From positions 124,001 to 188,000 of the IMG/VR virus record IMGVR_UViG_3300042566_001512: DNA of 64,000 bases; one strand, written 5' to 3'. A program made the position numbers and the translations under genes. The notes under the pieces are model-generated. The model saw only the letters and a program-made list of their open reading frames with translations, had not been told where the DNA came from and did no database searches. The stretch's first letter is position 1. Every line of letters starts with the position of its first letter. This document shows positions 13,468 through 60,713 of the stretch, one piece after another.

Positions 13468-15531
13468 TCAATTGGATACCGCGTTAATCATTCTAACGAG
13501 ACTTATGTTGTCTATGCCAAAGCTATTTCCTGTCGTATCTGTGGCGTGGTTCAGTAGCTCCAGTTTAGTGGTCGGATTGTTTCCCGTAGTGAACGAGTAA
13601 ATAATGTCCCTTTGTATGGATTTATTAGGATTTAGTACCACCGTCTTAGAGTGAAGAACGCCGTCTACCATTAGTCGTATGTCTGGTAAATTGACTGTTC
13701 CGTATACTAAAGAGTATTTTAATTGATATCTAGTATTTGGATCTAGTGGTATTTCCTGAGACCAGAAACTAATATTTGGACTTTCGCTAAAAACGAACAA
13801 ATATTTGCCGTCATCTAGTTTAATATCGTTGGGGTTAATTATACCTGGCTCCGTATATGTGTTTTGGCTATCCAGTGTAGCTATAGGGATGTCAGTTACT
13901 TTAATCTTGTCTCTACTAGTGAAGTCTAGTCTAGGAGACATTACGGTAGCAAAATTAGAAGCGCCCTCACTAAAACTTGGGTTGGTTATATAGTTAACGT
14001 CGACCTGGTATCTTAATCTGATATAGGTCAATATCGAGTGTATTTCTACTTTAGACAGTTCTCTTTGGTACACTAGCAAAAGATGCAGTTCTGCATTTTG
14101 ATCAACGCTGGGATGACCCAAATACTGCATTTCTTGACCGATGCCTTCTATATCTAGAGTGGACTGATCTATGTTGTTAGGTGCCTTATAGAAATTAAAA
14201 GGCGTGTTGCTAAGGCACATGCAATCTTTTTCTCTGGACCCTACTTTCATCACAGTTACATGTGCTCCACCGTCAAAAAACTTTGAGGTTTTGCCCAGGT
14301 AAGATATTTCATTATTGTTTATATCGCTGTACTGTGCAGCTATTCCGTTTAAAACATCTATTTCTAGTTTCTTAACATCGCTAGACAAGATGGGTAATTT
14401 AATTTGATTAGAAGAGTCCCTCGGGGCGGTGACTGCGATTATGGTCTGGCCCTTTGAGAAGTTAAGAAAGAGCCCGCCTTGCTTGTTTATCCATTGATTG
14501 GTACTGAACTTAACCGCGTTTTTGCTAGGAAAAACATAACTAGGTCCATAGCTAGGAGGGTTTTGCTGGTCTGCACTAAATGTAGTTTGGGCAGATCCGG
14601 TACTCGCCCATGTTAAAGTATTTGGGTCGTAGTTATCGGAATCTAGTCTGACGTAAAGGCCTCCCATAATACTGGGAACGTCTATCAAAGTACCGTTTTC
14701 CTCAAACTCTCGTATGCATAAAAGATTGGCGACGTTAGCTAGCTTATCGTTTGCGTTCAGGTGCTTATAATCAAGTAACTTTTGTTCCAGTAGATCCGTT
14801 TTATTACGAAGTTCTTGAAATTTAATATCTATGGAATTTAATTCCTCAGACAAAATTACAAGTGTATCTTCTGCCGATTTGTTAAGAGCGGTTATTAGAT
14901 CTACTTTTTGCAGTGGCTCTGTATTATACTTTTCAAAGAAAGAGTCTTGTTCAGTGAAGTACTCGTTTACTATGGACAGATGTATAGCTCTATCTCCAGT
15001 GGTAACTGCGACCTTTACCAGCCTCAAAGCGTCTGTTACGTATTCTAATCCATATATATCCAAAGCATCTTGGAGGTGCGGTGCTGGAGGATAACCTTTG
15101 GGTTTATTGATTATTTCGTTCCAGCTTATGTTTGAGTTATTATCATCTATGGCAGCTATTGCCGCACCTAGTAATTCCCTGTTTACTTGATCGTGACCAC
15201 CAAGGGCCTGGTAACTTATAGATAAAGTAGAAGAGGCAACAGACGGGAATAACAAAATAACAGTACAAACAGAGCCACCTACTAATTTTGTCACCTTGTG
15301 AAGCATCTCTGTGGCTATATAGTGCTGTTCTTTTTCCAGCAACGTGGCTTCCTGGGTATTCTCGTCGATAGAATAGACTCTTAAGCTATCGCTATAAAAA
15401 GCACCATATTTTGGTAAAATTAGCTTAATAGGCAAAAGTGACTGTACTTGATGAATTTCTTCTATTATTAGGTTATCTTGGGACTGACCAGTCCTGTCTA
15501 GCTCTAAATAAAAATTAGGTGCAGTGGCCAT
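13468..15531 (-). CDS. Baseplate/fibre-anchor paralog with C-terminal lectin/CBM-like domains
   Basis: Family N-terminus (DRTGQSQDN, YQALGG, WNEIINKP), coiled coil, LamG-like part (LLVYQRELS), CBM-like end (ITNPSFSEG, FGIDNISL). Confidence 0.6.
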   Translation of the reverse strand: MATAPNFYLELDRTGQSQDNLIIEEIHQVQSLLPIKLILPKYGAFYSDSLRVYSIDENTQEATLLEKEQHYIATEMLHKVTKLVGGSVCTVILLFPSVASSTLSISYQALGGHDQVNRELLGAAIAAIDDNNSNISWNEIINKPKGYPPAPHLQDALDIYGLEYVTDALRLVKVAVTTGDRAIHLSIVNEYFTEQDSFFEKYNTEPLQKVDLITALNKSAEDTLVILSEELNSIDIKFQELRNKTDLLEQKLLDYKHLNANDKLANVANLLCIREFEENGTLIDVPSIMGGLYVRLDSDNYDPNTLTWASTGSAQTTFSADQQNPPSYGPSYVFPSKNAVKFSTNQWINKQGGLFLNFSKGQTIIAVTAPRDSSNQIKLPILSSDVKKLEIDVLNGIAAQYSDINNNEISYLGKTSKFFDGGAHVTVMKVGSREKDCMCLSNTPFNFYKAPNNIDQSTLDIEGIGQEMQYLGHPSVDQNAELHLLLVYQRELSKVEIHSILTYIRLRYQVDVNYITNPSFSEGASNFATVMSPRLDFTSRDKIKVTDIPIATLDSQNTYTEPGIINPNDIKLDDGKYLFVFSESPNISFWSQEIPLDPNTRYQLKYSLVYGTVNLPDIRLMVDGVLHSKTVVLNPNKSIQRDIIYSFTTGNNPTTKLELLNHATDTTGNSFGIDNISLVRMINAVSN

Positions 15532-15658: not shown

Positions 15659-17173
15659 TCAATAACCCAGAGCTTGTCTTAGAACGAATGGCGGTAGGCC
15701 AGTGTTATGAAAGTGTGGCATAAATTCTAAAACGTCCCCTGCCACTATTGGATAATTTACAGATACCTGATTAACTGTGACTGTGAAATCTGTACCGTTG
15801 AACAAGACCAATGCATCGTTTAGTCTCAAACAGTATCCGTCAGAATCTATGGGCGTACTTATCAAATCGAATATTTCATTTTGGTCAGTTACTGTGAATT
15901 TTTGATATAGTCTATTTGATGGATTGTTTATCTTTATTGGCTTAGTTTGTATTACTATATCTACTACTTCACCTGCCAACAAAGGTTCTAAGAAAGTAAT
16001 TTCTGTATCGTTTATTTGGTAATTTACGGTGTTTATAAGTTCAGAAAACTTATTTATTACCACTCTAATACAGGTACCCATCAGTGGGCTGGAGTTTAGG
16101 CTATACGTCACTTGGTCAGCCAAAGCGCTAAACGAATAAACCTGGTAAGCGTCTTTATCCTCGTGAAGCCATCTTCCCATGGGAGGATTAGATACTGGCT
16201 TTATTACGGTATATCCGTTATCCGCTTCCGTATTAGTAGTGGACCAATAATAAGTACTAGAAGAGGAGTCACCTGGCGCAAGCTTACCTAGCAAGAGTAC
16301 GGCATGTACCTTGTTTGAATCTGTGCTTGGCACGTGTAGCTGCCTTAGTTCATTTATATTCTTTACCCGTAGTACGGCCTGATCAAGCGTTTGGTTAGTG
16401 GCGGTTCCTATAAGGGAGGCCCCTAGTTTAGTAGCCAGCGCAAGCATAGCGTCTGCAGCGTTGCCTATGGACTCCAATACCACTTGTATAGCCAGCCTCA
16501 CGCCTCTTGGGGTCATGTACTTGGTTATGCTAGTACCGTCAATAGATTCCGCATCGGTTGCCACTCCAAAGTTTTGTACATTACCAAGACCCAGCATATT
16601 CTTCGTGGGTATCAGCGAAGGGTCTACTACGGGACCTTGTACTGGCTTATCTGCAATAGCCTGTGCAACGTCTTCAACGGACTGAACCACGTCCGACATT
16701 CCCACTAGGTCTGTCAAGTTCCACTCGTGATCGACTACCGGAAACAAAGTAGGAACGTTGGCCACCTGCTCCCAGCTAGTCACCCTGGGGTTTCTTGTCA
16801 TGTCTGACAATATTTCGTTTATTTGAACTGGATCCAAAGTCCACTGTCCACCAACGGTGTTGTATGCTAGAGTTATAACTCCGGCAAGCTGTAGATTTAA
16901 TAAAGATATCCCACCATAAATCGGCTTAGCGCAACTTCTACTAGCTGCTATGAACTGAAAGCTAAAATGAAAGTCTATCCCCTCGACTAGAAATCTAATA
17001 TTGTTATCTATGTCTTTATATGAAATAGTGCAGCCATCTGCAAAAAATGGAGCGTAGGTTGGCACTATGAAATGGTAATTCCTACCAGACACCGCGGTGA
17101 TTATTTGCTGTTCGCCAGTTATTCTGTTAGCGGGAAGAGTACCCGTAGGATCAAATTCGTAAAAGGTCGTCAT
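15659..17173 (-). CDS. Baseplate/fibre-anchor paralog with tailspike-head-like domain and two C-terminal repeats
   Basis: FDPTGTLPANRI N-terminus; LGLGNVQNF fibre motif; GASLIG...DNGYTVIKP...GRW segment. Confidence 0.65.
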   Translation of the reverse strand: MTTFYEFDPTGTLPANRITGEQQIITAVSGRNYHFIVPTYAPFFADGCTISYKDIDNNIRFLVEGIDFHFSFQFIAASRSCAKPIYGGISLLNLQLAGVITLAYNTVGGQWTLDPVQINEILSDMTRNPRVTSWEQVANVPTLFPVVDHEWNLTDLVGMSDVVQSVEDVAQAIADKPVQGPVVDPSLIPTKNMLGLGNVQNFGVATDAESIDGTSITKYMTPRGVRLAIQVVLESIGNAADAMLALATKLGASLIGTATNQTLDQAVLRVKNINELRQLHVPSTDSNKVHAVLLLGKLAPGDSSSSTYYWSTTNTEADNGYTVIKPVSNPPMGRWLHEDKDAYQVYSFSALADQVTYSLNSSPLMGTCIRVVINKFSELINTVNYQINDTEITFLEPLLAGEVVDIVIQTKPIKINNPSNRLYQKFTVTDQNEIFDLISTPIDSDGYCLRLNDALVLFNGTDFTVTVNQVSVNYPIVAGDVLEFMPHFHNTGLPPFVLRQALGY

Positions 17174-19132: not shown

Positions 19133-20536
19133 ATGGAATACCAGCTAGATCCGACAGGAAAATCGTTAAGAAACAAAGTAATTAGTGAGACCAAGCCCAT
19201 TTCCCTACTAAATGGAAAAACACACCTGTTTATAATTCCTTTTGACGGGCCCTATTACGAAGAATCCCTTTTTATAAAGTACACCCCAGCTGTAGGTGAA
19301 GAAAAAATACTCTTCTCCGGCGTAGACTATTTTCCGGTCCTTCCTTACTCAGAAGCCACTCGAAAATTTAACGCACCAATTTTTGCGGGAATTGAATTTA
19401 TAGACCTGACACTAAACGGGACTGTCACTTATGCCTACCAAACGATGGGCGGCGCATACTCTACTGATCAGTCCACCATAACTGGCATAGAGGTCGGTTT
19501 TTCTGGAGACCCTAGATTTACCACTTGGGACTCGTTAGTGACACTTCCTGACGTGCCGGAGATAAGCCACCCTTGGTCTGTCGCCAACGTAGACAATATT
19601 GCAAACGCAGTGGATGAACTAGAGAAGATAGGCGTTGTTGTACACCTTAGACCTAGATTTCTACCAAGTCCAAGTGAAGAGGTTTTTATACCCACTGCTC
19701 AAGAAATAGGTCTTGGTTTTGTTCCCAACTATCCGCCGGCTACTGATCAGCAGGCTATTTTGGGCGAAGAAACACAATCGCTAATGACACCGGCCACCAC
19801 TAAGTTGGCTGTCAATGCGGAAGTAACCAGGGCACTGTCTGATATAGGTTATTTGGTGCCAGTTCAGTATGCAGGTAGCATTTATATAACAAATCCAAAG
19901 ACCACGGTAGATCACCAGGGGCGGATATACGCAATAAATCCTCAGGCTGTACCTTACACTACTACCGGGCAGTGGGACACCGATAAGCAAAACTTCATAA
20001 CCGTAAGAGCCGCCGACGTAGAAGACTGGTCACGGTTAACCTTGATGGTAGCTGGAGATGAAGAAGTAATAGACGTTTTAGGCAGAGTACTTGTTATAGA
20101 CGTAGAGCACGATAGTTCGCTGTTGCCGCAACTGATACTTAACGACGTGATATTCCTTGTCCATGGCCTGGACTACAAAATGAGCAATAACAGACTATAC
20201 GTCAAGTACCCAACTCAAACGGGTGACAAACTAGTTCTCCACACGAAAAGGTCGGCAGTCAATACTAATAGAGACAAACAAATAAATAAGGTGTTTGTGG
20301 TCCAGGACGGATCAAATACTTTTGACGTTTCTGATGTTAGTGTTAGCACTAGTAACTTACGGGTGAGTATAAATGAGTTTATTATACTCGATAGTGAGTC
20401 GAGCGACTATTCTATTTTAAATGGTGTTCTGACAATTAACTACCCAATAGGTCTGGGCGATGTTATCGAAGTAGAAAACATAGACAGCACCGTTCTGTTT
20501 GGAAAAATGTTTTTGCGCAATCTGGCAATGGATTAA
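19133..20536 (+). CDS. Baseplate/fibre-anchor paralog with two C-terminal repeats
   Basis: LDPTGKSLRNKV, PFDGPYY, YQTMGG, IGLGFVPNY and LMTPATT segments parallel ORF 15659-17173. Confidence 0.65.
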   Translation: MEYQLDPTGKSLRNKVISETKPISLLNGKTHLFIIPFDGPYYEESLFIKYTPAVGEEKILFSGVDYFPVLPYSEATRKFNAPIFAGIEFIDLTLNGTVTYAYQTMGGAYSTDQSTITGIEVGFSGDPRFTTWDSLVTLPDVPEISHPWSVANVDNIANAVDELEKIGVVVHLRPRFLPSPSEEVFIPTAQEIGLGFVPNYPPATDQQAILGEETQSLMTPATTKLAVNAEVTRALSDIGYLVPVQYAGSIYITNPKTTVDHQGRIYAINPQAVPYTTTGQWDTDKQNFITVRAADVEDWSRLTLMVAGDEEVIDVLGRVLVIDVEHDSSLLPQLILNDVIFLVHGLDYKMSNNRLYVKYPTQTGDKLVLHTKRSAVNTNRDKQINKVFVVQDGSNTFDVSDVSVSTSNLRVSINEFIILDSESSDYSILNGVLTINYPIGLGDVIEVENIDSTVLFGKMFLRNLAMD

Positions 20537-20652: not shown

Positions 20653-21651
20653 GTGGAAACATCTAATAAAATAAGATCACTAAATAGAATACCGTTTGAT
20701 TTCGTTGACGGTCTTTTGGTCAAAGGAATAGGAATAGACGATTTGGTGGACACGGCGACGGAAGCCGCATCTTCTGCAGCCGCAAGTGCTGCAAGTGCTG
20801 CACAGTCAGCATACCTGGCCGGTATAAATGCTACAGCTGAAGCCGCTGCAGCCGCAGCCGATGCTGTGTATGATCAACTTGAAGACATTAAGGTGCAGAC
20901 GGAGGTAGCCAGAGACGGCGCAGTAATTTCGGCCAACTCCGCTTCAGATTATTCCAATAGTGCCCAAGGCAGCGCGTTTACGGCTTCTCAACAGGCGCAA
21001 CAAGCTGAGAATAGTGCAGTAGCGGCGAGCGCCCTGGCGGCGGCGGCAGCCGGTAGTGCTTCGACTGCTAGCGGCTACAGTGAAACGGCCCTTCAGGCAG
21101 CAATTACCGCCACAAACGAGGCACAGTCGGCGGAACAATCGGCCGCCGTAGCTACCACTAAAGCACAAGAGGCAGTCCTTGCAGCAAGTGACCCGGGTGT
21201 AGTAGCCGTAGGAGCCGACTTGTTAGGTGCAGACACAATAGGTACGGTTGCTGCCGTTTCGCAGGAAGTTGTAAAACTTGCCGGATTGGAAGAAGAAATA
21301 GTATCGCTGGCATCGGGGGTTGTTCCTACCAGAGTCGTCACAATTGCAAATGGTAACTCTATTTCTATAAACGCCGATTTGACAGACGTGGCAGTGCAAT
21401 CGAATAGTCAAGTGGACGGCACACTTACTATAAACGCACCCACAGGAACACCTGGCGATTCTCAAAGATTAATAATTAGATTAAAAACCGACAATATTCA
21501 AAACCTAGCATGGAACGGCGTGTTTCAGGGATCTTCCGTCATGCCTCTTCCCTCGGTATCCTCCGGCTTTGGATTTATTGACTATTTTGGTTTTTTCTAC
21601 GACAGCACTACTAGTAAATGGCAGCTTGTTTCTTTTGTTGGAGGTTTTTAA
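20653..21651 (+). CDS. Tail fibre protein 2 (shared N-terminal motif, Ala-rich coiled-coil stalk)
   Basis: NKIRSLNRIPFDFVDGL start, long SAAxA heptad region, C-terminal LTINAPTGTP...WQLV domain. Confidence 0.7.
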   Translation: METSNKIRSLNRIPFDFVDGLLVKGIGIDDLVDTATEAASSAAASAASAAQSAYLAGINATAEAAAAAADAVYDQLEDIKVQTEVARDGAVISANSASDYSNSAQGSAFTASQQAQQAENSAVAASALAAAAAGSASTASGYSETALQAAITATNEAQSAEQSAAVATTKAQEAVLAASDPGVVAVGADLLGADTIGTVAAVSQEVVKLAGLEEEIVSLASGVVPTRVVTIANGNSISINADLTDVAVQSNSQVDGTLTINAPTGTPGDSQRLIIRLKTDNIQNLAWNGVFQGSSVMPLPSVSSGFGFIDYFGFFYDSTTSKWQLVSFVGGF

Positions 21652-21879
21652 ATGATTACAATAGATTTCGAAAGAACGGACGGCAACTACACTTTCAGAG
21701 ATGCGATTATACTTCCAGACGACCACGCGTTAACAGAAGAACAAATAGAAGAAATTAAAGATCGGCGCTGGTCAGAATGGTTAAAAGTATTGACGTCGCC
21801 GCCTCCTGCTCTGGACCAAGGCGCGATTGACTTTTTAGACCCAAATAACCAGGTCGATAAAGAGGTAAACAATGGCTGA
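21652..21879 (+). CDS. Small fibre-associated protein
   Basis: 75 aa with GGAGG RBS, coupled between fibre and adhesin genes. Confidence 0.6.
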   Translation: MITIDFERTDGNYTFRDAIILPDDHALTEEQIEEIKDRRWSEWLKVLTSPPPALDQGAIDFLDPNNQVDKEVNNG

Positions 21880-23647
21880 TCGTTATTGGGTAGGCGGTGG
21901 CGGCACATGGAGCTCCACTATTACGACTAACTGGAGCGAAACTAGCGGTGGAGCGGGGGGCGCTAGCGCGCCGACTAGTTTAGACGATGTCTATTTTGAT
22001 GCAAACAGTGACGCGGGAAGTCCTTTTACGGTAACTATATCTACTGGCGCAGTTAATAGAAATATTAAAGTTACGTCATTAGATCAAACAATGACTTTTG
22101 GCGGTACAGGCACTTGGTCTGTTCATGGCGACTTAGAATTTACTACCGGCGGTCTCTTGGTTAATTCTCACCAAGGAAGCATGAATTTTAATGGCACCGC
22201 CGGAGTAACTAACTACATAAAGACTAACGGAGTTGTGCTGGTGCCCGGTGGCGGGGCCAGTAATTCGCCCTTTAATATTAGATTGAATATAAATTCTGGT
22301 AAATGGGTATTAGGTTCCGCGCTTTCGATAACACCGCAAAGTTATATGGGTGGTTTTTATGTTAATGGCGGAATATTAGACACCTCGGGATATAATTTAA
22401 CAGGGGTGGGATTACAAATCACGGGATCGGCGTCAAAAGAGATATATTTAAGAAACTCCACCGTAACATTAACGTCAAGTTTCTATAATCCTTCTACTGC
22501 CGGATCTTTGTTGTTTGACGCCGGTACGTCTACTCTTAATTTTGGTGTTCTTGGCTCCATCGGCACCAGCGGACAATCTCTTAACTTTTATAATGTAAAT
22601 TTCGGCACTACATCTAGGGGTTCTTCTTCAATCGGTGGCGCGGCCGTATCTTTTAATAAGTTGACTATTGCGGATTCTGTATATAACAGCCCGGTTGTTC
22701 TTTCTGGTAATATAACAACAAACGAATTAGACATAAAGTCATATTGTACAATTATAAGTGACAGTCTTGGGACCCAAAGAACACTTACAATTAATTCCGC
22801 GTTTACTGCAAGCAGTAACCCGATATTGTTTAGGGACGTAAATGTCGCCGGGCCACTGGCTCCTATATCGGGTGCTAATTTTGGCGATGCAGGTAACAAT
22901 TCCGGTATAACGTTTCGCCCAGCAAAAACTCTTTACTCCAGATCTTCTTCGCTTTTTTTATATACATCGTTTACTTGGTCAGACACTAGTAACGGAGTAG
23001 CTAATCATTATCTTTTGCCACAGGATACCGGCATAATAGATAACAATAGTCAAAGCAATATAGCGTGGCCATATTCTGCGGCCTATTTCTTTGGTACGCT
23101 AAACGCCGAAACTAGAACCACTCCGTTGACTTTAAGTATAAACATCAGCGCCGCCACGCAGTCTTTATATTACGCTACATTTGTTGGTGATTTTAAACTA
23201 TCGAGCTCCGTTACTCTTACTACCCCAAGTGGCTCTGGAATAGGTCAAATACTATCATTCCAAGGTAACAAAAATCAAAAAATAAAGTTAAGCGGACAGC
23301 AAATAAATACAATTAGTATAAGTAAAGTTAATTCTTCTTTAGATTTAGAGAGCGATCTCAATATAGTTAATACCAGAATTTTTGATATATCCTCAGGGAC
23401 CTTTAACACTAATAACTATAACTTGACCTGTGGTTTCTTTTCATCTAGTAATACCTCCATTCGCAACATAAATTTAGGTACTAGTAAAATTACCCTGACT
23501 GGCACCGGGGTAGTTTGGAACACCGCCACTGCTACAAATCTAGTGCTTTCGGCGCAAAATTCTACAATCGCACTAAAAAACTCAGGAGATCAGAGTTTTG
23601 CCGGCGGTGGATTAAACTACGGTAAATTGTCAGTGGAGAACCCATAA
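21872..23647 (+). CDS. Ser/Thr/Gly-rich beta-helical adhesin A
   Basis: MADRYWVGGGGTW...APTSLDDVYFDANS N-terminus; beta-solenoid-like composition. Confidence 0.65.
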   Translation: MADRYWVGGGGTWSSTITTNWSETSGGAGGASAPTSLDDVYFDANSDAGSPFTVTISTGAVNRNIKVTSLDQTMTFGGTGTWSVHGDLEFTTGGLLVNSHQGSMNFNGTAGVTNYIKTNGVVLVPGGGASNSPFNIRLNINSGKWVLGSALSITPQSYMGGFYVNGGILDTSGYNLTGVGLQITGSASKEIYLRNSTVTLTSSFYNPSTAGSLLFDAGTSTLNFGVLGSIGTSGQSLNFYNVNFGTTSRGSSSIGGAAVSFNKLTIADSVYNSPVVLSGNITTNELDIKSYCTIISDSLGTQRTLTINSAFTASSNPILFRDVNVAGPLAPISGANFGDAGNNSGITFRPAKTLYSRSSSLFLYTSFTWSDTSNGVANHYLLPQDTGIIDNNSQSNIAWPYSAAYFFGTLNAETRTTPLTLSINISAATQSLYYATFVGDFKLSSSVTLTTPSGSGIGQILSFQGNKNQKIKLSGQQINTISISKVNSSLDLESDLNIVNTRIFDISSGTFNTNNYNLTCGFFSSSNTSIRNINLGTSKITLTGTGVVWNTATATNLVLSAQNSTIALKNSGDQSFAGGGLNYGKLSVENP

Positions 23648-26600
23648 TGAAAACGGTAACGATCACTGGAGTAAATACATTTAAAGAAATATCGGACACT
23701 AATTGGAATTCCGATACTCTGACTATTGTTTTTCCAAACGCGACAACAAATATTGAGAAATGGACAGTGTATGGATCGGCGGCATATCCTGTTACTTTGT
23801 CTAGAACGGGTTCGTCGGGCTCTTTTACCCTGAACTACACGGGGACGAGCAACATATCTTCCGATTATATTAACGTATCTAACGGCGCTGGACTTCCTTC
23901 CAACACGTGGTATCTTGGGCCAAACAGTGTTAACGGCGTAAATACCTCTGGATTTATTTTTACGTATGGTGCAGTAAGGTATTGGGTGGGCGGCACCGGT
24001 ACGTGGGATCATCAAAGCGCAACAAATTGGGCATACCAAAGTGGCGGTTTCGCCGGGGCGCCGGCTCCCACTAATCTAGATGACGTGTATTTCGATAATA
24101 ATAGCAGCAGCGGAGCTTTTACAGTAACCCTCGACAGCGGTTTTGTTGGAACAGGAAGCATAAGCGGAACCACACTGACTATTACCGCCGTTACTAAGGG
24201 AACCTTGGCTGTAGGAAAAAACATCTATTATAATTTATCTAATGTTTTTGCCCCTGATGCGGACTTATCTAACATAACTATACAAAGTATACTAACCGGA
24301 ACCGGGGGGGTTGGTACGTACAGAATAAGCACTAGCTTTTCCAACGTGACAAGTAGAGCGATATATTCCGATATACCAAGATGTCGAGATCGCGCGTCGC
24401 CCACTACAAATAGTTTAAGTTTTGTTGGATCCTCTCCAATAATAATATCCGGAAGCATAGAGGATTCTTTTTCTGTAAATAGCGCTGGCTATTCGTCCGT
24501 AATCATTTTAAACTCCGGATATAATTGCCGACTGGGCGCAGCGGCTTCATTAGCACGATATTTTCTAACCGGTTCTAATAATAGAACTCTGATAAGTTCA
24601 TTAAGCGCCTCGATGGTGTTCGTATACTCTGGCGGATTTAATACAAGCAATTTAAGCGTCACACTAAGTAATTTTTTATCGGCTGGTGGATCCTTAACTA
24701 GAAACATAGATCTTACATATTCTGAAATATTTTTAAGAGACGTATATAACTATCTTAACATAGTGAGCTCGGCAAACTTAACATTTAGTTCTATAAATTC
24801 AACAATATATCTTAACTTCTACTCCGGACACGAAACGGCAGGATTTTTAACTAACAACCTGCAATACGGAAATATTATTTTTCGACCGGCACCGGCTGGA
24901 AGCTCGTATGCAATTGTATATTTTACTGGAAATCTATATTGCAGAAACCTAAACATTGAGTCCATTCAGGGTTCTACTAATGCACAAGTAAACGTATGTT
25001 TCAACAGCGGCGCTTCTTCCTCTTTGCCTGTTTACGTAAACGTTTCAGAGAAGTTTACACTTCGTGGGTCCTCCGCTCTGGCCAGAAAGACGTTAGTGGG
25101 GTCGTGTGGCGAACTCAGCGCAAGCTTTAATAAGCCATCAAAGATATACATTACAGCAAGCCAATACGACATAGATTTCGTAGATTTTAGAGACGCAGAA
25201 TTCACAAACACAGTAATATCTGGACAAAGCATTGGAAATCTTGGCAATAACGCCGGCATTCAATTTACGCCACCCAAGACCGTTTATTGGAAAAACACCT
25301 CTACTTCTTACGCCGTTTGGAAGAGTGCATCTTACGCGTTAACCGAAGACGGCGTGGGTTCTTTTGATAACTATCCATTGGCACAAGACACTGTAATTTT
25401 TACAGATGCAGGAATAGGGGCAAGTGCGTCCATTGGGTTTTTAAATCCATATGACGGACTTGCCGGCAACATCGACATGTCCAGATTAACAAAACCCCTG
25501 ACCTTTAACTGGACGGCATTTACTGGCGGTGGGGGATATAAGGGCATATACGGCGACTTTATTTTATCTAACAGCGTAACAATCAATAGCAACACTCCAA
25601 TCGCCTTCTATAATAGAAAAAATTCTATTATAGATACCAAAGGAAAGATCGCTAATGGATATTTCTTTAACAGCGAGAATTGCACCTTAACCATTCAAAG
25701 CCCATTAGTTACATCAGGAGCAGTGACTTTGGTTCGTGGTAATTTATCAATGCTTGCTGATATTACATGTGACACCTTCTCTAGTTCGGCGGTGTTCTTG
25801 AGAAGTGTTGATTTTGGTAGCAACTTTATTAATGTTACAGGATTTAACAAAGATGTAGTTTCAAGTACGTCATCTGGCACCGGCTGGTCTTGTAGTGGAA
25901 CAAAGATGTTTGTCCTACAGGGATCCCCCACTAGCGGAATAAGAAACGTTGGTGGAATAGCATCATCAAATGCCACACAGGATCAAGTGTATTCTTTCAA
26001 AGTAGCAGGTGGTTCTGATACTGTTAGAACGATTAATTTAAGTAGATTTAATAGTATCATTTTTGAAGACGAATTTACAGGATCTAATGGTATTCTGTGG
26101 AATTATATTTTTGGAGACTTAAGGTTTTCTGGTAACATGACTATAACTCCAACTCCAAGTGGAAGTGCGCATGATCTCTATTTTGTTGGATCAAAACAAC
26201 AAAACTTAACAACTAACGGCGTTAATGTACCGAGGACATGTATTATTGCAAAAGACACGGGATCTAACGTTGTTCTTCAAGATGACGTTAATTTTATTCA
26301 GCATCTTAACAATAGCCAAAAGGTTCAGCTGCAATCTGGAACCTTAAATTTAAATGGCCGTAAGCTGACTACGGTTTCGTTCTCTTCAGAAACGTCAAGT
26401 CTGAAAAGCGTTAATTTTGCAAACGGTTCTTTGGTTGTGTCCGGGTCCTCTTTTTCTAATACTTCCACGGCCTTAACTATAACGGGCCCAGGAACCATTA
26501 GCATGACGAGTAACGCGGCTAAAACGTTTGCAGGTGGAGGGTATCAGAGCTACCCTACGCTTAATCAGGGGGGAGCAGGGACTCTTACAATAACCGGAGC

Positions 26601-26961
26601 CAACGGGTTTCAGGCGATAACGGACACGGATTCGCAGTCCACTATAGTGTTTCCTTCTAACTCCACCACAAGAGTAAACGACTTTAGGCTAAGGGGCGAA
26701 CCCGGTAAAATTTTGTCACTACAATCCTCGGTATCTGGGCAGCGGGCTACGCTTACATACTCCGGGATATCGAGCGGCCCAATATTGACTAGCTACGCAT
26801 CTATTAAAGACATCTCGGTTACTGGGGCGCAGTGGAATTCTCCAGTAAATTACGGATGTGTTGACGCGGGTAATAACGTAGGTTGGAACTTTGGCAACGT
26901 TTCTCTTAAAAGAGATTTCTCGCCGTTTATGGCAGTTCCTATACCTATTGGTGCAAATTAA
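23647..26961 (+). CDS. Ser/Thr/Gly-rich beta-helical adhesin B
   Basis: 1104 aa; internal RYWVGGTGTW...APTNLDDVYFDNNS; ends DAGNNVGWNF; paralog of adhesin A. Confidence 0.65.
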   Translation: MKTVTITGVNTFKEISDTNWNSDTLTIVFPNATTNIEKWTVYGSAAYPVTLSRTGSSGSFTLNYTGTSNISSDYINVSNGAGLPSNTWYLGPNSVNGVNTSGFIFTYGAVRYWVGGTGTWDHQSATNWAYQSGGFAGAPAPTNLDDVYFDNNSSSGAFTVTLDSGFVGTGSISGTTLTITAVTKGTLAVGKNIYYNLSNVFAPDADLSNITIQSILTGTGGVGTYRISTSFSNVTSRAIYSDIPRCRDRASPTTNSLSFVGSSPIIISGSIEDSFSVNSAGYSSVIILNSGYNCRLGAAASLARYFLTGSNNRTLISSLSASMVFVYSGGFNTSNLSVTLSNFLSAGGSLTRNIDLTYSEIFLRDVYNYLNIVSSANLTFSSINSTIYLNFYSGHETAGFLTNNLQYGNIIFRPAPAGSSYAIVYFTGNLYCRNLNIESIQGSTNAQVNVCFNSGASSSLPVYVNVSEKFTLRGSSALARKTLVGSCGELSASFNKPSKIYITASQYDIDFVDFRDAEFTNTVISGQSIGNLGNNAGIQFTPPKTVYWKNTSTSYAVWKSASYALTEDGVGSFDNYPLAQDTVIFTDAGIGASASIGFLNPYDGLAGNIDMSRLTKPLTFNWTAFTGGGGYKGIYGDFILSNSVTINSNTPIAFYNRKNSIIDTKGKIANGYFFNSENCTLTIQSPLVTSGAVTLVRGNLSMLADITCDTFSSSAVFLRSVDFGSNFINVTGFNKDVVSSTSSGTGWSCSGTKMFVLQGSPTSGIRNVGGIASSNATQDQVYSFKVAGGSDTVRTINLSRFNSIIFEDEFTGSNGILWNYIFGDLRFSGNMTITPTPSGSAHDLYFVGSKQQNLTTNGVNVPRTCIIAKDTGSNVVLQDDVNFIQHLNNSQKVQLQSGTLNLNGRKLTTVSFSSETSSLKSVNFANGSLVVSGSSFSNTSTALTITGPGTISMTSNAAKTFAGGGYQSYPTLNQGGAGTLTITGANGFQAITDTDSQSTIVFPSNSTTRVNDFRLRGEPGKILSLQSSVSGQRATLTYSGISSGPILTSYASIKDISVTGAQWNSPVNYGCVDAGNNVGWNFGNVSLKRDFSPFMAVPIPIGAN

Positions 26962-27001
26962 CTATTATAAATTAATTTACTAATTTTTTTTAATTATATA
27001 C

Positions 27002-27037
27002 AGCATAAATGGGAGGGCGAGCCCTCCCATTTATGCT
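27002..27037. terminator. 17-bp hairpin (CATA...TATG family)
   Basis: AGCATAAATGGGAGGGC-GA-GCCCTCCCATTTATGCT. Confidence 0.7.
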
Positions 27038-27101
27038 ATGGTCGCTATAAAGAATAAAATTATTTTAATGGTTTTCAATTATTTTAAACTAAGGAACACT
27101 A

Positions 27102-27962
27102 ATGGCTACACCTAATAAGTTAAGATCACTAAACAGATTACCGTTTGATTTTGTGGACGGGTTAAAGATAAAAGGAACCGACGTAACGGATTTAATGTTT
27201 TTATTTTCCGATCAGGGTGCTTCTCTCGTTGGAAAGAACGGTGGCGGTTCTGTTCAAGACAAACTCGATGAAATAGACGGCCAAGAAAATACAGTAACTG
27301 GGCAATTTTCTTTATCTATATCTGGTTATAGAAACGAAATAACGGGCACTGCTACCGCCTGTTCGGGTAGAAACAACGATGTGTCCGGGAACGATTGTTT
27401 TGTAGCAGGAGACGGCAATACTTCAAGTGGAAATTGGACAACCGCATTCGGTTATAAAAACACAATATCGCACGATCACAGTCATGTAAGAGGCGGCTAC
27501 AACGGCATTACTAGTTGGAGTGGACAAGATGTACGCTGGTCGTACCGTAACTTAGAAGCCCCACTTACCCCAGCTCGTCAACATTTTTACCTGGACTTGA
27601 GCGACAACACTGCCACCACCGCAGCATCGCAGTTAAAGCTACTAAATGGGAGCGCGTTAATAGGCATTCCAGAGTTGAGTATTTGGAAATGTAAACTGCA
27701 AGTGGTCGCAATGAGTTCTGGAATAAAGGGCGCGTCTTTCGATATATCTTTCACTATACAAAGAGGCGCTAGTTCCACAGTTTTCTTGGGCACTATTGAC
27801 ACCGTTAGTAAATTAGATTCCGGCTTAGGCACGGCCTCAAACGCAGCATCGGCATCTGTTGCATTGTCTGGAAACAATTTAGTTGTAAATATACAGCCAA
27901 GACTGGACACTGCGCTTTCTATAAAGTGGGCCGGAACGCTTGAGGTTTTGGAAGTCAGGTGA
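27102..27962 (+). CDS. Tail fibre/spike protein 3 (shared N-terminal motif)
   Basis: NKLRSLNRLPFDFVDGL start, GASLVG motif, short G-x-x-N (YadA-head-like) repeats. Confidence 0.65.
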   Translation: MATPNKLRSLNRLPFDFVDGLKIKGTDVTDLMFLFSDQGASLVGKNGGGSVQDKLDEIDGQENTVTGQFSLSISGYRNEITGTATACSGRNNDVSGNDCFVAGDGNTSSGNWTTAFGYKNTISHDHSHVRGGYNGITSWSGQDVRWSYRNLEAPLTPARQHFYLDLSDNTATTAASQLKLLNGSALIGIPELSIWKCKLQVVAMSSGIKGASFDISFTIQRGASSTVFLGTIDTVSKLDSGLGTASNAASASVALSGNNLVVNIQPRLDTALSIKWAGTLEVLEVR

Positions 27963-27966
27963 CATT

Positions 27967-28005
27967 ATACGACATAAATGGGGGAGACCCCCATTTATGT
28001 CGTAT
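27967..28005. terminator. 18-bp hairpin between convergent genes (CATA...TATG family)
   Basis: ATACGACATAAATGGGGG-AGA-CCCCCATTTATGTCGTAT. Confidence 0.72.
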
Positions 28006-28016
28006 GTTTTTGAAAT

Positions 28017-28277
28017 TCAGTCAGTGCTGGTATTTTGACTGCCGCTCACTATTACGGCACCACACCCCGCGACGTCACCTGTTTTAATCCCACGTAACGA
28101 TTTACTTGTATAGCCCGCTGTGCCCGTTACGCCAGTAACCCCGTGACCGTCGATTGGGCAACTGTGCGAATCCCCACTAATGCACATAGGTATTCCGTTT
28201 ACAAGAACAGAAGAGCCTGCGCTTATCATGGTTCCGCCGTGCGAGCTTGAGTCACCTAACCTCACTACCTTTGCCAT
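28017..28277 (-). CDS. PAAR-domain spike tip protein
   Basis: VRLGDSSSHGG, VNGIP, GDSHSCPIDGHG and GDVAGCGAVIVSGS are PAAR hallmarks. Confidence 0.9.
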   Translation of the reverse strand: MAKVVRLGDSSSHGGTMISAGSSVLVNGIPMCISGDSHSCPIDGHGVTGVTGTAGYTSKSLRGIKTGDVAGCGAVIVSGSQNTSTD

Positions 28278-28287
28278 GGTATCTCCT

Positions 28288-29124
28288 TTAATTGATGCTG
28301 GTGGCAGCAGAACTAAGACTCAGACTACTTGAATCGGTTATAGAAGTTCCGCTTGAAGAGGATATACTAGTGCTACCAGATTTTATATCTATAGTAGAGT
28401 TGGCCTTAAGTACGTAGTCATTGCATTTAACAGTGTATGTCTGGGGTACAGTCACGTCCAAATTTGGTCCTTTCATATCGAAAATAGTATTGTCTACATT
28501 TTTTAGGACTATCTGCGTCTGACTAGAGTCCAATAAGACGTAATTACCAACGTCATCGGTTATGACCAGTTTACCATTTCCTGTGTCTAGTTGTATATCG
28601 TAACCAAACGGCTCAGCGTTATCTTTGCTAGTGTGCAGGGTTATTAGTTTTTTATGCGTGCTTATTTCTATAAAATAAAAAGTCTGGGAATTCATCTCTG
28701 CAGATTCGTTGGTCGTTGCACTAAACGCGTATATAACCGTCTCTAGCTTTCTTAGCTTAAGATCTTCATTTAGTGTGGCCCAAAAATACCTATCGGTGTC
28801 GCCAAACTTGTAAAGCATCACCATTTCCCCTCTACGCACGTCAGGGGGCGTTGTTCTGTTTGCTGCACCTATGGGTAGCCACTTAGCTTTGATGGTCGTA
28901 GTGGCCTGTACAGTGGCCTCGTAGCTCGATCCTAGGTTGTCTACAGCTTTAGCCGAGTAGTCAGTTGCGGCCGGTACTAGTTCGCCATCGAGCATCGGCA
29001 TCTCCTCGATGGGAGTTACTTCTACTTCTTTACTGGATAATAATTTATTTTCAGCTACCGTACCTAAAGAATAGAACTTCAGCTTACTAATTTGCGGTGC
29101 AAATGGATCAAAAACGTTTTCCAT
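28288..29124 (-). CDS. Baseplate central spike (phiKZ gp164-like)
   Basis: AKWLP...NRTTPPDVRRGEMV OB-fold part and Ser/Thr-rich beta-helix C-terminus, directly upstream of PAAR. Confidence 0.8.
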   Translation of the reverse strand: MENVFDPFAPQISKLKFYSLGTVAENKLLSSKEVEVTPIEEMPMLDGELVPAATDYSAKAVDNLGSSYEATVQATTTIKAKWLPIGAANRTTPPDVRRGEMVMLYKFGDTDRYFWATLNEDLKLRKLETVIYAFSATTNESAEMNSQTFYFIEISTHKKLITLHTSKDNAEPFGYDIQLDTGNGKLVITDDVGNYVLLDSSQTQIVLKNVDNTIFDMKGPNLDVTVPQTYTVKCNDYVLKANSTIDIKSGSTSISSSSGTSITDSSSLSLSSAATSIN

Positions 29125-33452: not shown

Positions 33453-34775
33453 TTAATCGTAAAGAGGCGTAGTCAATTTACTAGATACAAGCAATTCGAT
33501 ATTCATGTATCTTGTACTAATGAAAACAATGCCGTATCTCTGTACCTTTCTATAACCGATGGGTATATCTGCATTATAGGTTAAATTCTCGGCTATCAAT
33601 ATCATTTGCGTTAGGCGAGTGAGCAGTCCCTGTGTCTGAGAAGACATCCGGTTGTAATCTACGCTGGTAGAAGAAACATTTATTATATCCGGATATATCT
33701 GAGTAATATCAAATAGATTTTCACGATTCTCGTATCCACCAATAACCAGCAGGGCCAGAGACTTATATGGGTGCGGCATTATGCTGGCGTGTGACTGCAC
33801 AAAAGATCCAGCGTAACCCGTCTCGGGTGTTAGTATGGACTTAAGATAATCTATTTCTTTGTCTGCATAAATTACCGGTGAATATATTCCCGATTGTAAA
33901 ACCATATTAGGTATTGCATAGTTGTGCCATCTAGGGAAGAATATAAATTCGGTTCTTTTAAATATATCTGGAAATATTGCTCTCCATTCAGATTCACTTC
34001 TGTTAGTGTTATTTAGAATGTATGCCGCAATTGCTTCCCTTATGACGTCGTTATCGTTCCCGTTAAGACCATATACCAAAATAGACCAGTTAGTATTTAT
34101 TAGATTTGCGCCGTTAACGGGATCTACCCAGTTAAAAGATACGCCGACCAACGCAGTCTCTGGATCGTCACCCCTGGCTACCTGAATATAGTTAAATCTT
34201 TCTGAATGTGTTACATTGCTCACCAACATCTGAACGTTGGCAGCAGTGCTAAAAAAAGAGTCTATGTTCTCAATTGGAGGGACGACTACTATCTCGTAGT
34301 TATCGTACTTCTGTCTGAAGCTTTGATCGCTAAGCCATATAGTGGTAATATTGTCTTCGTCCAGGTAGCTTCTAGTCTTCCAACTTATCCACTCTGGGAA
34401 CTGTTTGCCATTTGATGCGTTTACCAGGCTACCGCATTCCATTGAGTCGCATTCTTCTGCAAAATTGGTGGCCAACGACAATAGAAACTGTTGGGTGTTC
34501 TCTATAGTAGTACTTGCCAATTGTCTAGTGTACACCCAGTCCAATATAGAGTGACCTATAGAAACTATAGACGGTACCGGGTCTATTTCTTCGGTAACGT
34601 CACTGGTGCTGCTAAACGTATAAATAGTTATATATGAATTTAAATTAGAAGGATATACCTTCTTGTCTTTACTAAAAGTGGCACTATAGATCGATAGCTC
34701 CCCAATAGGAGCAACAACGCCACTAACGTTACTAACCAGTGTCTCTATGCTAGCAAACCCTTTTAACTGGTACAT
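33453..34775 (-). CDS. Conserved virion structural protein
   Basis: 440 aa; MYQLKGF, APIGELS, YEIVVVPPI and IFPDIFKRTEF..PRW segments recalled from phiKZ-like structural proteins. Confidence 0.6.
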   Translation of the reverse strand: MYQLKGFASIETLVSNVSGVVAPIGELSIYSATFSKDKKVYPSNLNSYITIYTFSSTSDVTEEIDPVPSIVSIGHSILDWVYTRQLASTTIENTQQFLLSLATNFAEECDSMECGSLVNASNGKQFPEWISWKTRSYLDEDNITTIWLSDQSFRQKYDNYEIVVVPPIENIDSFFSTAANVQMLVSNVTHSERFNYIQVARGDDPETALVGVSFNWVDPVNGANLINTNWSILVYGLNGNDNDVIREAIAAYILNNTNRSESEWRAIFPDIFKRTEFIFFPRWHNYAIPNMVLQSGIYSPVIYADKEIDYLKSILTPETGYAGSFVQSHASIMPHPYKSLALLVIGGYENRENLFDITQIYPDIINVSSTSVDYNRMSSQTQGLLTRLTQMILIAENLTYNADIPIGYRKVQRYGIVFISTRYMNIELLVSSKLTTPLYD

Positions 34776-60608: not shown

Positions 60609-60713
60609 GATTTTTATCTTTCTGTGAAAAAACACCGCACGCGCGTATTACTTTGGACGTATTTCATTTCTCATTTACCTTATTTTATCTTTTCTTTAGG
60701 AGCATAAAGCACC

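What the first reader, a model, noticed from the sequence alone, without database searches (positions are those of the whole stretch)
21872..26961. Tandemly duplicated adhesin whose gene boundary falls inside the repeat unit
Seen: unit A starts RYWVGG at 21881 and unit B starts RYWVGG at 23977, about 110 aa into the second ORF. They share motifs (FRD...GDAGNNSGITFRPAKTLY / FRD...GNLGNNAGIQFTPPKTVY; QDT; GDFxLSxSVT). ORF A stops right after FAGGGLNYGKL. In unit B the equivalent FAGGGYQSYPTL continues TLTITGANGF...TIVFPS...GWNF, and that segment is what ORF B begins with (TVTITGVNTF...TIVFPN...GFIF). So A's C-terminal cap is encoded as B's N-terminus across a TAATG overlap. Inference: B completes A's fold in trans to make an interlocked long fibre, or a -1 shift or 1-nt indel separates a single ~1700-aa protein.
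Basis: partly seen in the sequence, partly recalled or inferred. Interest (0 to 1): 0.6.

Follow-up and report, generated by a model that had tools for sequence, protein, structure and literature searches.

The report
Split beta-helix phage fibre gene pair
In a freshwater jumbo phage, a long beta-helix fibre protein that is a single chain in related phages is encoded by two adjacent genes cut between two turns of the helix; the cut is old and conserved, and the two proteins are predicted to stack back together end to end.

Summary
ORF A (21872-23647, 591 aa) stops 16 residues after FAGGG. ORF B (23647-26961, 1104 aa) starts in a TAATG overlap with about 108 residues that, in single-chain relatives, directly follow the A-like part. 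A second RYWVGG unit starts at B residue 111.

The split is not an assembly error. An independent freshwater contig spans the junction with no gap. Four related metagenomic loci have the same stop and start at the same place.

It is not conserved recoding either. One relative has a 10-nt insert that puts both genes in the same frame and supplies a new Shine-Dalgarno site, replacing the GGAG found in the other four. There is no shared slippery site and no RNA structure.

Many relatives (about 700 aa with one unit, about 1700 aa with two) are uninterrupted. The five split forms make one clade (support 100/98), so this looks like a single ancient gene fission.

Models show right-handed parallel beta-helices of the tailspike, pertactin and lyase kind. 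B 1-108 forms the last rungs of A's second helix. A complex model stacks B 3-16 in register on A 574-586 (ipSAE 0.91, best control 0.01). The residues flanking the junction are 62-87% conserved within the clade, while the rest falls to 21-39%.

Best reading: a virion fibre built from two chains joined by completing a beta-helix in trans. Binding is predicted, not shown.

The parts
21652..21879 (+). Conserved 75-aa small ORF that overlaps A's start by 8 nt. It accompanies the beta-helix gene as a cassette partner in many phage types. Function unknown.
   Evidence: Alignment A5: 41-61% identity to the ORFs directly upstream of the family gene in L005, L006, L007, L010, L011 and L013. Gene tables.
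21872..23647 (+). Gene A, 591 aa. It has the RYWVGG head at residue 4 and two beta-helix segments. It lacks the last rungs of the second helix and ends ...FAGGGLNYGKLSVENP followed by the stop.
   Evidence: AF2 model: pLDDT 88.9, pTM 0.85; the last 11 residues have pLDDT 57 when A is modelled alone. More than 799 homologues.
21872..22921 (+). A residues 1-350: first right-handed parallel beta-helix (H1), ending at the GDAGNNSGITF motif.
   Evidence: pdb_via: HK620 tailspike 6gvp_A, Z 15.3, rmsd 3.7, 295 aligned, model range 1-349. PL6 lyase 5gkq_A, Z 15.9. P22 tailspike 2xc1_A, Z 14.8.
22922..23644 (+). A residues 351-591: second beta-helix (H2), cut short. It runs to the chain end with an open last rung (QSFAGGG / LNYGKLSV).
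   Evidence: pdb_via: pectate lyase 1ee6, Z 11.2, rmsd 3.5, 174 aligned, model range 395-589. Interface residues 552, 562-563, 567-568 and 571-591 in the complex model.
23635..23638 (+). GGAG Shine-Dalgarno-like site for B, 8 nt upstream of the ATG, embedded in A's last codons (V-E-N-P).
   Evidence: Conserved in the window, L006, L007 and L008. In L005 it is lost (GAAG), and an AGGA appears inside the 10-nt insert instead.
23645..23649 (+). TAATG: A's stop and B's start overlap by 1 nt. In A's frame, TAA is followed at once by TGA.
   Evidence: The same TAATG is present in L006, L007 and L008.
23647..26961 (+). Gene B, 1104 aa.
   Evidence: AF2 model: pLDDT 86.9, pTM 0.71.
23647..23970 (+). 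B residues 1-108: the missing terminal rungs of A's H2 helix, acting as a docking module. It ends with the (G)VNTSGFIF motif.
   Evidence: It directly follows the A-like part in single-chain relatives. Alignment A4 has 72 rows. pLDDT 83-94, with strands at 3, 25, 49 and 70-75, i.e. a period of about 22 aa. It stacks on A 571-591 in the complex model. Identity within the split clade is 62-87%.
23971..25275 (+). B residues 109-543: second unit, helix H1. RYWVGG lies at 111-116 and the segment ends GNLGNNAGIQF.
   Evidence: pdb_via: HMW1 secretion domain 2odl, Z 12.2, range 111-527. P22 tailspike 8u1o_o, Z 11.5, range 110-543.
24133..24375 (+). B residues 163-243: small beta-barrel inserted after the head.
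   Evidence: pdb_via: IF2 and eEFSec domain-II-like barrels, Z 6.8, rmsd 2.3-2.9, 65-72 aligned. The same insert sits in A' (residues about 57-130) in L005. Contigs from other samples diverge from the window at 24215, inside this insert.
25276..26901 (+). B residues 544-1085: second unit, helix H2, complete. Its own terminal rungs (975-1085) follow FAGGG at residue 961.
   Evidence: pdb_via: KP34p57 depolymerase 8bke, Z 12.2, range 544-859. Pertactin 2iou_G, Z 10.6, range 609-1068. Tapirin 6n2b, Z 10.8, range 846-1062. The last two run straight through the position equivalent to the split.

Best explanation
A and B are two real, separately translated genes. They arose when a two-unit beta-helix fibre gene of about 1700 aa split once, in the ancestor of a small clade of related phages.

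The cut lies in the turn between two consecutive rungs of the second beta-helix of unit 1. A therefore ends with an open rung. B begins with the four or five rungs that finish that helix, then runs on into a complete second unit.

B is translated from its own GGAG site, which lies inside A's last codons. In four of the five loci it is probably also coupled to A through the TAATG overlap.

Inferred, not shown: after translation, B's N-terminal rungs stack in register on A's last rung. This rebuilds the continuous helix without a covalent bond and gives a two-chain rod equivalent to the single-chain protein. The conserved joint then works as a docking module, while the rest of each protein diversifies by recombination. 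The product is a virion-surface fibre or spike that probably binds or degrades a host surface glycan.
For: Shown by sequence:
- Collinearity with single-chain relatives across the junction.
- The same stop and start in the window, L005, L006, L007 and L008. Codon-level changes on both sides fit each gene's own frame.
- L005 carries a 10-nt insert that changes the frame relation and brings its own AGGA, while the GGAG is lost there.
- The split forms make one branch (100/98) whose sister is an uninterrupted protein.
- The identical 591-aa protein is on record on 3 contigs read; the one place shown (a contig found in 2 samples) pairs it with a 1104-aa gene in the same 1-nt overlap.
- An independent freshwater contig spans 23519-24215 with 4 substitutions and no gap.
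- The junction flanks are conserved far above the rest. A 531-591 is 70-83% identical against 26-39% elsewhere in A. B 1-165 is 62-87% against 21-32% further along (P0125, P0122). Against the uninterrupted P0131 the same segments score only 16-47%.

Modelled:
- Both proteins are right-handed beta-helices.
- In the complex of A with B 1-112, ipSAE was 0.91 in three runs and the best of three controls was 0.01. That mark was reached by 58 of 80 solved complexes and by 2 of 110 mismatched pairs. There were 81-82 contacts, the partner's pLDDT was 92, and the runs agreed in 100% of contacts.
- A574-577 pairs with B3-7 and A581-586 pairs with B11-16, a constant offset equal to one rung of about 21 aa.

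Context:
- In the window the genes sit among a PAAR gene, a baseplate gene and tail-fibre-like paralogues.
- The homologue in Methylophilaceae phage P19250A follows the host-specificity J gene and a tail-fibre gene.

Precedent: mixtures of recombinant p33 and p55 fragments of VacA, whose p55 domain is predominantly beta-helical, reconstitute an active protein (PMC4926140).
Against: - No experiment or proteomic data shows that A and B bind, or that no fused product exists.
- The complex model used alignments taken largely from uninterrupted relatives. It may therefore be replaying the ancestral contact within one chain rather than testing the present pair. The tool's calibration also holds only roughly for user-supplied alignments.
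- Only assembled contigs were available for the read check, not raw reads, and run X1 may be the source sample.
- The oligomeric state is unknown.
- Where the product sits on the virion is unknown. In SU10-like phages the homologous gene lies between the capsid and adaptor genes.
- No catalytic or binding site was identified.
Confidence: 0.72

Rival explanations
1. Assembly or sequencing indel: the true gene is one ORF of about 1700 aa and the frame break at 23645 is an error.
For: A and B are collinear with single-chain relatives, and the break needs only a 1-nt frame change.
Against: - The source contig has depth of about 30 and no difference from the window. An independent freshwater run (X2) spans the junction with substitutions only and no gap.
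- The identical 591-aa protein is on record on 3 contigs read, and the place shown has the same 591-aa plus 1104-aa gene pair.
- Four diverged loci from other samples carry the same stop and start.
- There is no long homopolymer at the site.
Confidence: 0.02
2. Programmed recoding (-1 frameshift, or stop readthrough) makes a fused A-B protein, alone or alongside the separate products.
For: - In the window, B is in the -1 frame and B's frame is open for 21 nt before the ATG.
- The P-site codon CCA could re-pair on CCC in the window.
- In L005 the two genes are in the same frame, so readthrough of TAA would fuse them.
Against: - The frame relation differs between relatives: -1 in four loci and 0 in L005.
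- No X XXY YYZ slippery motif is present. The -1 codon is CCC only in the window and TCC in L006, L007 and L008.
- In the four overlap loci A's TAA is followed in frame by TGA.
- Downstream RNA is no more structured than shuffled sequence (z -0.2 to -0.8).
- The ATG and a Shine-Dalgarno site are conserved, and the Shine-Dalgarno site is replaced when the spacer changes.
Confidence: 0.05
3. A and B are independent proteins that do not associate. B's first 108 residues are simply an N-terminal domain of B, and A works as a shortened beta-helix.
For: - B 1-110 is modelled confidently without A (pLDDT 83-94).
- Many relatives of about 830 aa end after only three of the terminal rungs and are not followed by a gene for the remainder. 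Shortened helix ends are therefore tolerated in this family.
Against: - The complex model scores far above its controls and has the register expected for rung stacking.
- A's last 60 residues and B's first 108 are the most conserved parts within the split clade, but not in comparison with uninterrupted relatives.
- The two genes stay adjacent in every split locus, and overlap in four of the five.
- A's last rung is weakly modelled when A is alone (pLDDT 57).
Confidence: 0.17
4. A is a decaying remnant cut off by a nonsense or frameshift mutation, and only B still functions.
For: A lacks the family's usual C-terminal end.
Against: - The A-type ORF is intact in all four loci that hold its whole gene (591, 651, 1290 and 1368 aa; L008 holds only its last 254 residues) despite 26-39% identity over most of its length. 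Its terminal 60 residues are 70-83% conserved.
- The model is confident throughout.
Confidence: 0.03

Closest known systems
Uninterrupted metagenomic relatives of the same (unnamed, no Pfam) RYWVGG-head beta-helix family: one-unit proteins of about 680-710 aa (e.g. P0064, P0080) and two-unit proteins of about 1700 aa (e.g. P0131, P0126). Cultured examples are the 925-aa 'PE family protein' of Methylophilaceae phage P19250A and a hypothetical protein of Limnohabitans phage DC31.
   Same: They share the head motif, the mid GNNxGIxF motif, the FAGGG rung, the terminal rungs ending GNNxGWxF, and the small upstream ORF. Identity is 29-51%, collinear over the full length.
   Different: In those proteins the chain is continuous through ...FAGGGxxYxxLTIGGxTGTSTLTITG... 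In the window and four relatives a stop and a start sit in that turn.
Phage tailspikes and capsule depolymerases (HK620, P22 gp9, KP34p57, K64-1 S2-4) and polysaccharide lyases (PL6, PL3).
   Same: Right-handed parallel beta-helix fold: Z 11-16, rmsd 3.5-4.4, 260-300 residues aligned. The genes are phage-encoded and lie in a baseplate and fibre gene neighbourhood.
   Different: - Sequence identity is only 6-12%.
- No N-terminal particle-binding domain is recognisable.
- There are two to four helices in series.
- Trimer formation and enzyme activity were not tested.
- None of these is known to me to be split within the helix.
Multi-protein phage fibres joined end to end or branched: T4 gp34-gp35-gp36-gp37 (PMC5537660), and CBA120 TSP1-4 (the latter from my own knowledge).
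   Same: Several gene products join to form one long receptor-binding appendage. The attachment parts are conserved and the distal parts vary.
   Different: Those joints use dedicated adaptor domains. Here the joint is a former contact within one chain, between two rungs of one beta-helix.
Fragment complementation and C-terminal 'stable core' templating in beta-helical secreted proteins: VacA p33 plus p55 (PMC4926140), and autotransporter passengers such as pertactin and Pet (PMC5895577).
   Same: Pieces of a beta-helical protein reassociate to give function. The C-terminal rungs are the most stable part and nucleate in-register stacking of the remainder. Pertactin aligns to B 609-1068, Z 10.6.
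   Different: Those fragments come from proteolysis or from laboratory constructs of a single gene, and the proteins are secreted by bacteria. Here the split is encoded in the genome, conserved, and found in a phage. No signal peptide or translocator domain was found.

Membership tests
RYWVGG-head beta-helix phage protein family (unnamed; no Pfam, NCBIfam or PHROG model) | Significant full-length sequence similarity to family members. | tested here: met
   A query returned 799 hits, the best at E 5e-63. B residues 1-200 returned 647 hits. Pfam, NCBIfam and PHROG gave no match.
RYWVGG-head beta-helix phage protein family (unnamed; no Pfam, NCBIfam or PHROG model) | The head motif M-x-x-R-Y-W-V-G-G lies at the very N-terminus of the protein. 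| tested here: met
   A has it at residue 4, as do nearly all relatives. In B it lies internally at residue 111, as in the second unit of two-unit relatives.
RYWVGG-head beta-helix phage protein family (unnamed; no Pfam, NCBIfam or PHROG model) | The FAGGG rung is followed in the same chain by the terminal rungs (TLTITGxNTF ... GNNxGWxF). | tested here: not met
   A stops 11 residues after the FAGGG motif (16 from its first residue), and the terminal rungs are B 1-108. B's own unit does meet this feature (residues 961-1085). This is the variant feature of the pair.
RYWVGG-head beta-helix phage protein family (unnamed; no Pfam, NCBIfam or PHROG model) | A small ORF of about 75-80 aa lies directly upstream and overlaps the start. 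| tested here: met
   Window 21652-21879. Alignment A5 covers seven loci from different phage types.
Phage tailspike / depolymerase | Right-handed parallel beta-helix body. | tested here: met
   Z 11-16 to the HK620, P22, KP34p57 and K64-1 spikes. Foldseek E-values alone were not significant.
Phage tailspike / depolymerase | Homotrimer with an N-terminal particle-binding domain. | not tested
   The head motif starts at residue 4, which leaves no room for a separate N-terminal domain in A. Oligomeric state was not modelled.
Phage tailspike / depolymerase | A catalytic or glycan-binding groove with acidic residues. | not testable with these tools
Autotransporter adhesin (a label some sources give to relatives) | A signal peptide and a C-terminal beta-barrel translocator, or a TPS domain with a partner. 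| tested here: not met
   No Pfam autotransporter, TPS or PATR domain was found in A or B. The proteins start directly with the head motif or the terminal rungs, and the genes lie in a phage genome.
Programmed -1 ribosomal frameshift site | A slippery heptamer, a downstream structure, and a frame relation conserved among relatives. | tested here: not met
   No shared slippery motif was found. Downstream RNA gave z -0.2 to -0.8. L005 has the two genes in the same frame.

The most novel reading that the evidence does not exclude
The split is an assembly device, not a tolerated accident. A's second helix cannot finish folding until B's N-terminal rungs supply, in trans, the 'stable core' that nucleates rung stacking. 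A would then be incorporated only as an A-B rod. The conserved rung-on-rung joint would act as a plug-and-socket that lets distal receptor-binding parts be swapped between phages. That would be a previously undescribed kind of fibre connector, made from a split solenoid.
Probability: 0.3. Interest if true: 0.6.

Novelty: new variant of a known kind. Interest (0 to 1): 0.45.

Why it matters
Phage receptor-binding fibres are usually joined through dedicated adaptor domains. Here a natural, conserved gene fission runs through the middle of a beta-helix. The conservation pattern and the model both indicate that the two halves rejoin by ordinary rung stacking.

If confirmed, it would matter in three ways:
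- It would be a natural example of fragment complementation in a beta-solenoid.
- It would define a simple docking module: A's last 60 residues or so, plus B's first 108. Such a module could explain how distal host-range modules are exchanged, and might be reused for engineering fibres in laboratory phages.
- It draws attention to a very large phage beta-helix family that has no Pfam, NCBIfam or PHROG model: 799 and 647 hits in two capped searches. The family travels with a conserved small ORF across jumbo myophages, SU10-like podophages and siphophages of freshwater bacteria.

For annotation, the lesson is not to 'repair' the two genes into one.

Tried and rejected
- **Family scans.** Pfam, PHROG and NCBIfam scans of A and B gave no meaningful hit.
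- **PDB by sequence.** A profile of alignment A2 against PDB sequences gave only chance-level hits at E 0.017-0.026.
- **Foldseek.** The B model against the PDB gave nothing at E <= 1e-3. Fold assignment therefore rests on the VIA-align second look.
- **Close phage relatives.** blastn of 21000-28000 against the phage collection found no match. tblastn of B found only two partial matches.
- **A second, independent split.** I asked whether relatives of about 830 aa that end in mid-module (...LVSLRSSTxGTxFT...) represent another split. They do not: in L010 the next gene (68 aa) is unrelated.
- **Recoding.** I looked for a slippery site, a downstream RNA structure and a conserved frame relation. 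None was found.
- **Read support.** Only Logan contigs were available, not raw reads. X4 held nothing on this stretch and X3 only short pieces that do not reach the junction. No RNA run holds the stretch, so expression could not be examined.
- **Literature.** Full-text searches found no paper combining gene fission with beta-helix tail fibres. A VacA paper checked for trans-complementation (PMC2836311) did not contain the statement, which was found in PMC4926140.
- **Upstream 332-aa protein.** The product of 20653-21651 is only weakly similar, through a repeat motif, to the protein upstream in L010. I do not count it as part of the conserved cassette.
- **Not run.** The large exhaustive protein search was left out because the word search already answered the question. 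Model coordinates are not exposed, so contacts within the B model could not be inspected.
Full report
**What the window is.** The window is bases 124001-188000 of a 208.8-kb IMG/VR virus record. A virion protein at 33453-34775 has its best matches, at 32-37% identity, in phiKZ-like jumbo phages of Ralstonia, Burkholderia and Pseudomonas. The stretch occurs in lake and freshwater metagenomes.

The two ORFs lie in a baseplate and fibre neighbourhood:
- three paralogues with a phrog_2163 / tail-fibre-like N-terminal domain (13468-15531, 15659-17173, 19133-20536);
- a baseplate assembly gene (28288-29124);
- a PAAR gene (28017-28277);
- a beta-roll protein (27102-27962).

- A is 21872-23647 (591 aa) and B is 23647-26961 (1104 aa).
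- A's TAA and B's ATG share one base (TAATG at 23645-23649), and B is in the -1 frame.
- RYWVGG begins at 21881 and at 23977, the latter being B residue 111.
- A and B share two long similar stretches (E 8e-15 and 2e-11).
- B's first 68 residues match B 979-1042 at 40% identity (E 7e-10).

**Relatives show that A plus B's first 108 residues were once one chain.** A word search with A gave 799 hits, nearly all starting M-A-D-R-Y-W-V-G-G at residue 1-5. Homologues of about 680-710 aa match A 1-589 and then, 1-7 residues later, B 4-106. Examples are P0064, P0080, P0105, P0112 and P0119.

A search with B 1-200 found many single-chain proteins of about 1700 aa. P0131 (1708 aa) matches A at 1-600, B 1-200 at 603-805 and the B unit at 717-1694, with B at 46% identity overall.

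In uninterrupted relatives the local sequence reads ...FAGGGKTYGKLTIGGATGTSTLTITGANTF... The window has ...FAGGGLNYGKLSVENP, then the stop, then MKTVTITGVNTF... The cut therefore lies in the turn between two strands.

Each unit is closer to its counterpart in other phages than to the other unit in the window. The two-unit layout is thus an old family architecture, not a local duplication.

**The split is real and old.**
- The identical 591-aa protein is on record on 3 contigs read; the one place shown, a contig found in two samples, has the same gene layout with the 1104-aa gene starting in a 1-nt overlap.
- The likely source run has one 46-kb contig at depth of about 30 with no difference from the window.
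- An independent freshwater run has a contig spanning 23519-24215 with four substitutions and no gap. Only contigs, not raw reads, were on offer.

More decisive, four diverged metagenomic loci show the same boundary:

| Locus | Upstream gene | Downstream gene |
|---|---|---|
| L006 | 1368 aa | 1106 aa |
| L007 | 1290 aa | 1088 aa |
| L008 | partial, ends ...FAGGGLSYGRLGVENP | 1733 aa |
| L005 | 651 aa | 1029 aa |

The first three share GAGAAYCCWTAATGAARAC with the window.

A tree of the region running from the terminal rungs into the next head (54 rows, 5 split and 49 uninterrupted) puts the five split forms on one branch (100/98). Their sister, P0126, is uninterrupted. The midpoint root is for drawing only, but one fission is the simplest reading. 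The same genomes keep other unit junctions uninterrupted: P0127 at 598, P0133 at 599 and P0123 at 981.

**It is two genes, not recoding.**
- L005 has a 10-nt insert (AAGGACAAAT) between stop and start. This puts A' and B' in the same frame, whereas the other four are at -1. A recoding signal would not survive that change.
- The GGAG that lies 8 nt before the ATG in four loci is lost in L005 (GAAG), and an AGGA inside the insert replaces it. That is what selection for independent initiation of B would produce.
- In the four overlap loci A's TAA is followed in frame by TGA.
- B's frame is open for only 21 nt upstream of the ATG.
- The -1 codon under the last sense codon is CCC only in the window and TCC elsewhere.
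- Downstream RNA is no more stable than shuffled sequence (z -0.2 to -0.8).

**Fold.** Both proteins are modelled with good confidence: A has pLDDT 88.9 and pTM 0.85, and B has pLDDT 86.9 and pTM 0.71. Foldseek E-values were not significant. The structural re-alignment gives right-handed parallel beta-helices:

| Segment | Best structural matches |
|---|---|
| A 1-349 | HK620 tailspike Z 15.3, rmsd 3.7, 295 aligned; PL6 lyase Z 15.9; P22 tailspike Z 14.8 |
| A 395-589 | PL3 pectate lyase Z 11.2 |
| B 109-543 | HMW1 secretion domain Z 12.2; P22 tailspike Z 11.5 |
| B 544 to about 900 | KP34p57 depolymerase Z 12.2 |

Pertactin aligns to B 609-1068 (Z 10.6) and tapirin to B 846-1062 (Z 10.8). Both run straight through B's own FAGGG at residue 961. 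The so-called cap is therefore the last four or five rungs of a continuous helix, not a separate domain.

B 1-108 shows short strands with a period of about 22 residues. Each unit is thus two helices in series. A is H1 plus a shortened H2. B is the end of that H2, followed by a full H1 and a full H2.

**Do the halves rejoin?** The complex test of A with B 1-112 scored ipSAE 0.91 in three runs. The best of three controls was 0.01. There were 81-82 contacts, the partner's pLDDT was 92, and the runs agreed in 100% of contacts. The mark was reached by 58 of 80 solved complexes and by 2 of 110 mismatched pairs.

The interface is A 552, 562-563, 567-568 and 571-591 against B 2-23, 25, 27 and 41. A574-577 lies on B3-7 and A581-586 on B11-16. 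The constant offset equals one rung of about 21 residues, which is parallel in-register stacking.

Caveats: my alignments came largely from uninterrupted relatives, so the model may be restating the ancestral contact within one chain. The tool itself says the result supports binding but does not show it.

Independent support comes from conservation within the split clade:

| Segment | Identity within split clade | Identity to uninterrupted P0131 |
|---|---|---|
| A 531-591 | 70-83% | 47% (531-560), 16% (561-591) |
| A 61-530 | 26-39% | 26-34% |
| B 1-165 | 62-87% | 27% (1-30), 35% (31-108), 51% (109-165) |
| B 246-850 (P0125, P0122) | 22-32% | 35-58% |

A's last 11 residues are also weakly modelled when A is alone (pLDDT 57).

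**Mechanism proposed.**

Shown:
- there are two conserved genes;
- B has its own ribosome-binding site;
- the cut lies between helix rungs;
- the junction flanks are conserved.

Inferred:
- The TAATG overlap couples translation and so favours equal amounts of the two proteins.
- B's N-terminal rungs cap and complete A's helix, giving a two-chain rod.
- The joint acts as a docking module while the remainder recombines.

Contigs from two other samples leave the window sequence at 24215, with the same foreign continuation. A small barrel insert sits in B here but in A' in L005. Both point to mosaic exchange.

By analogy, the C-terminal rungs of autotransporter passengers form a stable core that nucleates stacking (PMC5895577). 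Mixtures of recombinant VacA p33 and p55 fragments reconstitute active protein (PMC4926140).

The fission may have begun as a nonsense mutation with re-initiation (the L005-like state) or as a frame change (the TAATG state). The data do not order these two.

**Role.** The role is most likely a virion fibre or spike that binds or degrades a surface glycan. This rests on three things:
- the tailspike-like fold;
- the gene neighbourhood in the window;
- the position of the homologue in the cultured Methylophilaceae siphophage P19250A, right after the host-specificity J gene and a tail-fibre gene.

In SU10-like phages the gene lies between the capsid and adaptor genes, so its place on the virion is not settled.

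**Verdict.** It is a new variant (a conserved split inside a helix) of a known kind (phage beta-helix fibres, multi-chain fibres). Interest is moderate.

Noticed in passing
window 21652-21879 (+); L005 361-597; L006 5678-5902; L007 720-956; L010 5798-6001; L011 5766-6008; L013 259-489: A 75-80-aa ORF (MITIDFERTDGxYTFRDAI...) lies directly upstream of the beta-helix gene and overlaps its start. This holds in jumbo-phage relatives and also in SU10-like and HK97-type small phages (41-61% identity). The two genes look like a mobile cassette. The function of the small protein is unknown.
   Followed up: partly
window 24215 (B residue about 190): Contigs from two other samples (X2 freshwater, X3) match the window up to 24215 and then continue with the same different sequence. 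This looks like a strain-level recombination breakpoint just after B's conserved N-terminal module.
   Followed up: no
window 24133-24375 (B 163-243); L005 A' residues about 57-130: A beta-barrel of about 80 aa, resembling domain II of translation factors (Z 6.8), is inserted after the head motif. It sits in B in the window but in the upstream gene in L005.
   Followed up: partly
L006 5895-10001; L007 949-4821; L008 766-5967: The number of units varies among split-clade relatives. The upstream gene has two units in L006 and L007, and the downstream gene has two units in L008. The split position itself stays fixed.
   Followed up: partly
relatives such as P0006, P0014, P0018 (L010 6001-8484): Many family members of about 830 aa end after only three of the terminal rungs (...LVSLRSSTxGTxFT...). 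The next gene, a 68-aa helical protein, is unrelated. This is a naturally shortened helix end, not a second split.
   Followed up: yes
window 13468-15531 (-), 15659-17173 (-), 19133-20536 (+): Three paralogues share a phrog_2163 / tail-fibre-type N-terminal domain of about 170-200 aa and have different C-terminal parts. This suggests several alternative fibres anchored in the same way.
   Followed up: no
window 27102-27962 (+) and 28017-28277 (-): Just downstream of B lie a beta-roll protein (Pfam LbR_Ice_bind, E 7.8e-9) and a PAAR-motif spike-tip protein (E 9.9e-9).
   Followed up: no
window 53769-60635 (-): A 2288-aa ORF was not examined.
   Followed up: no
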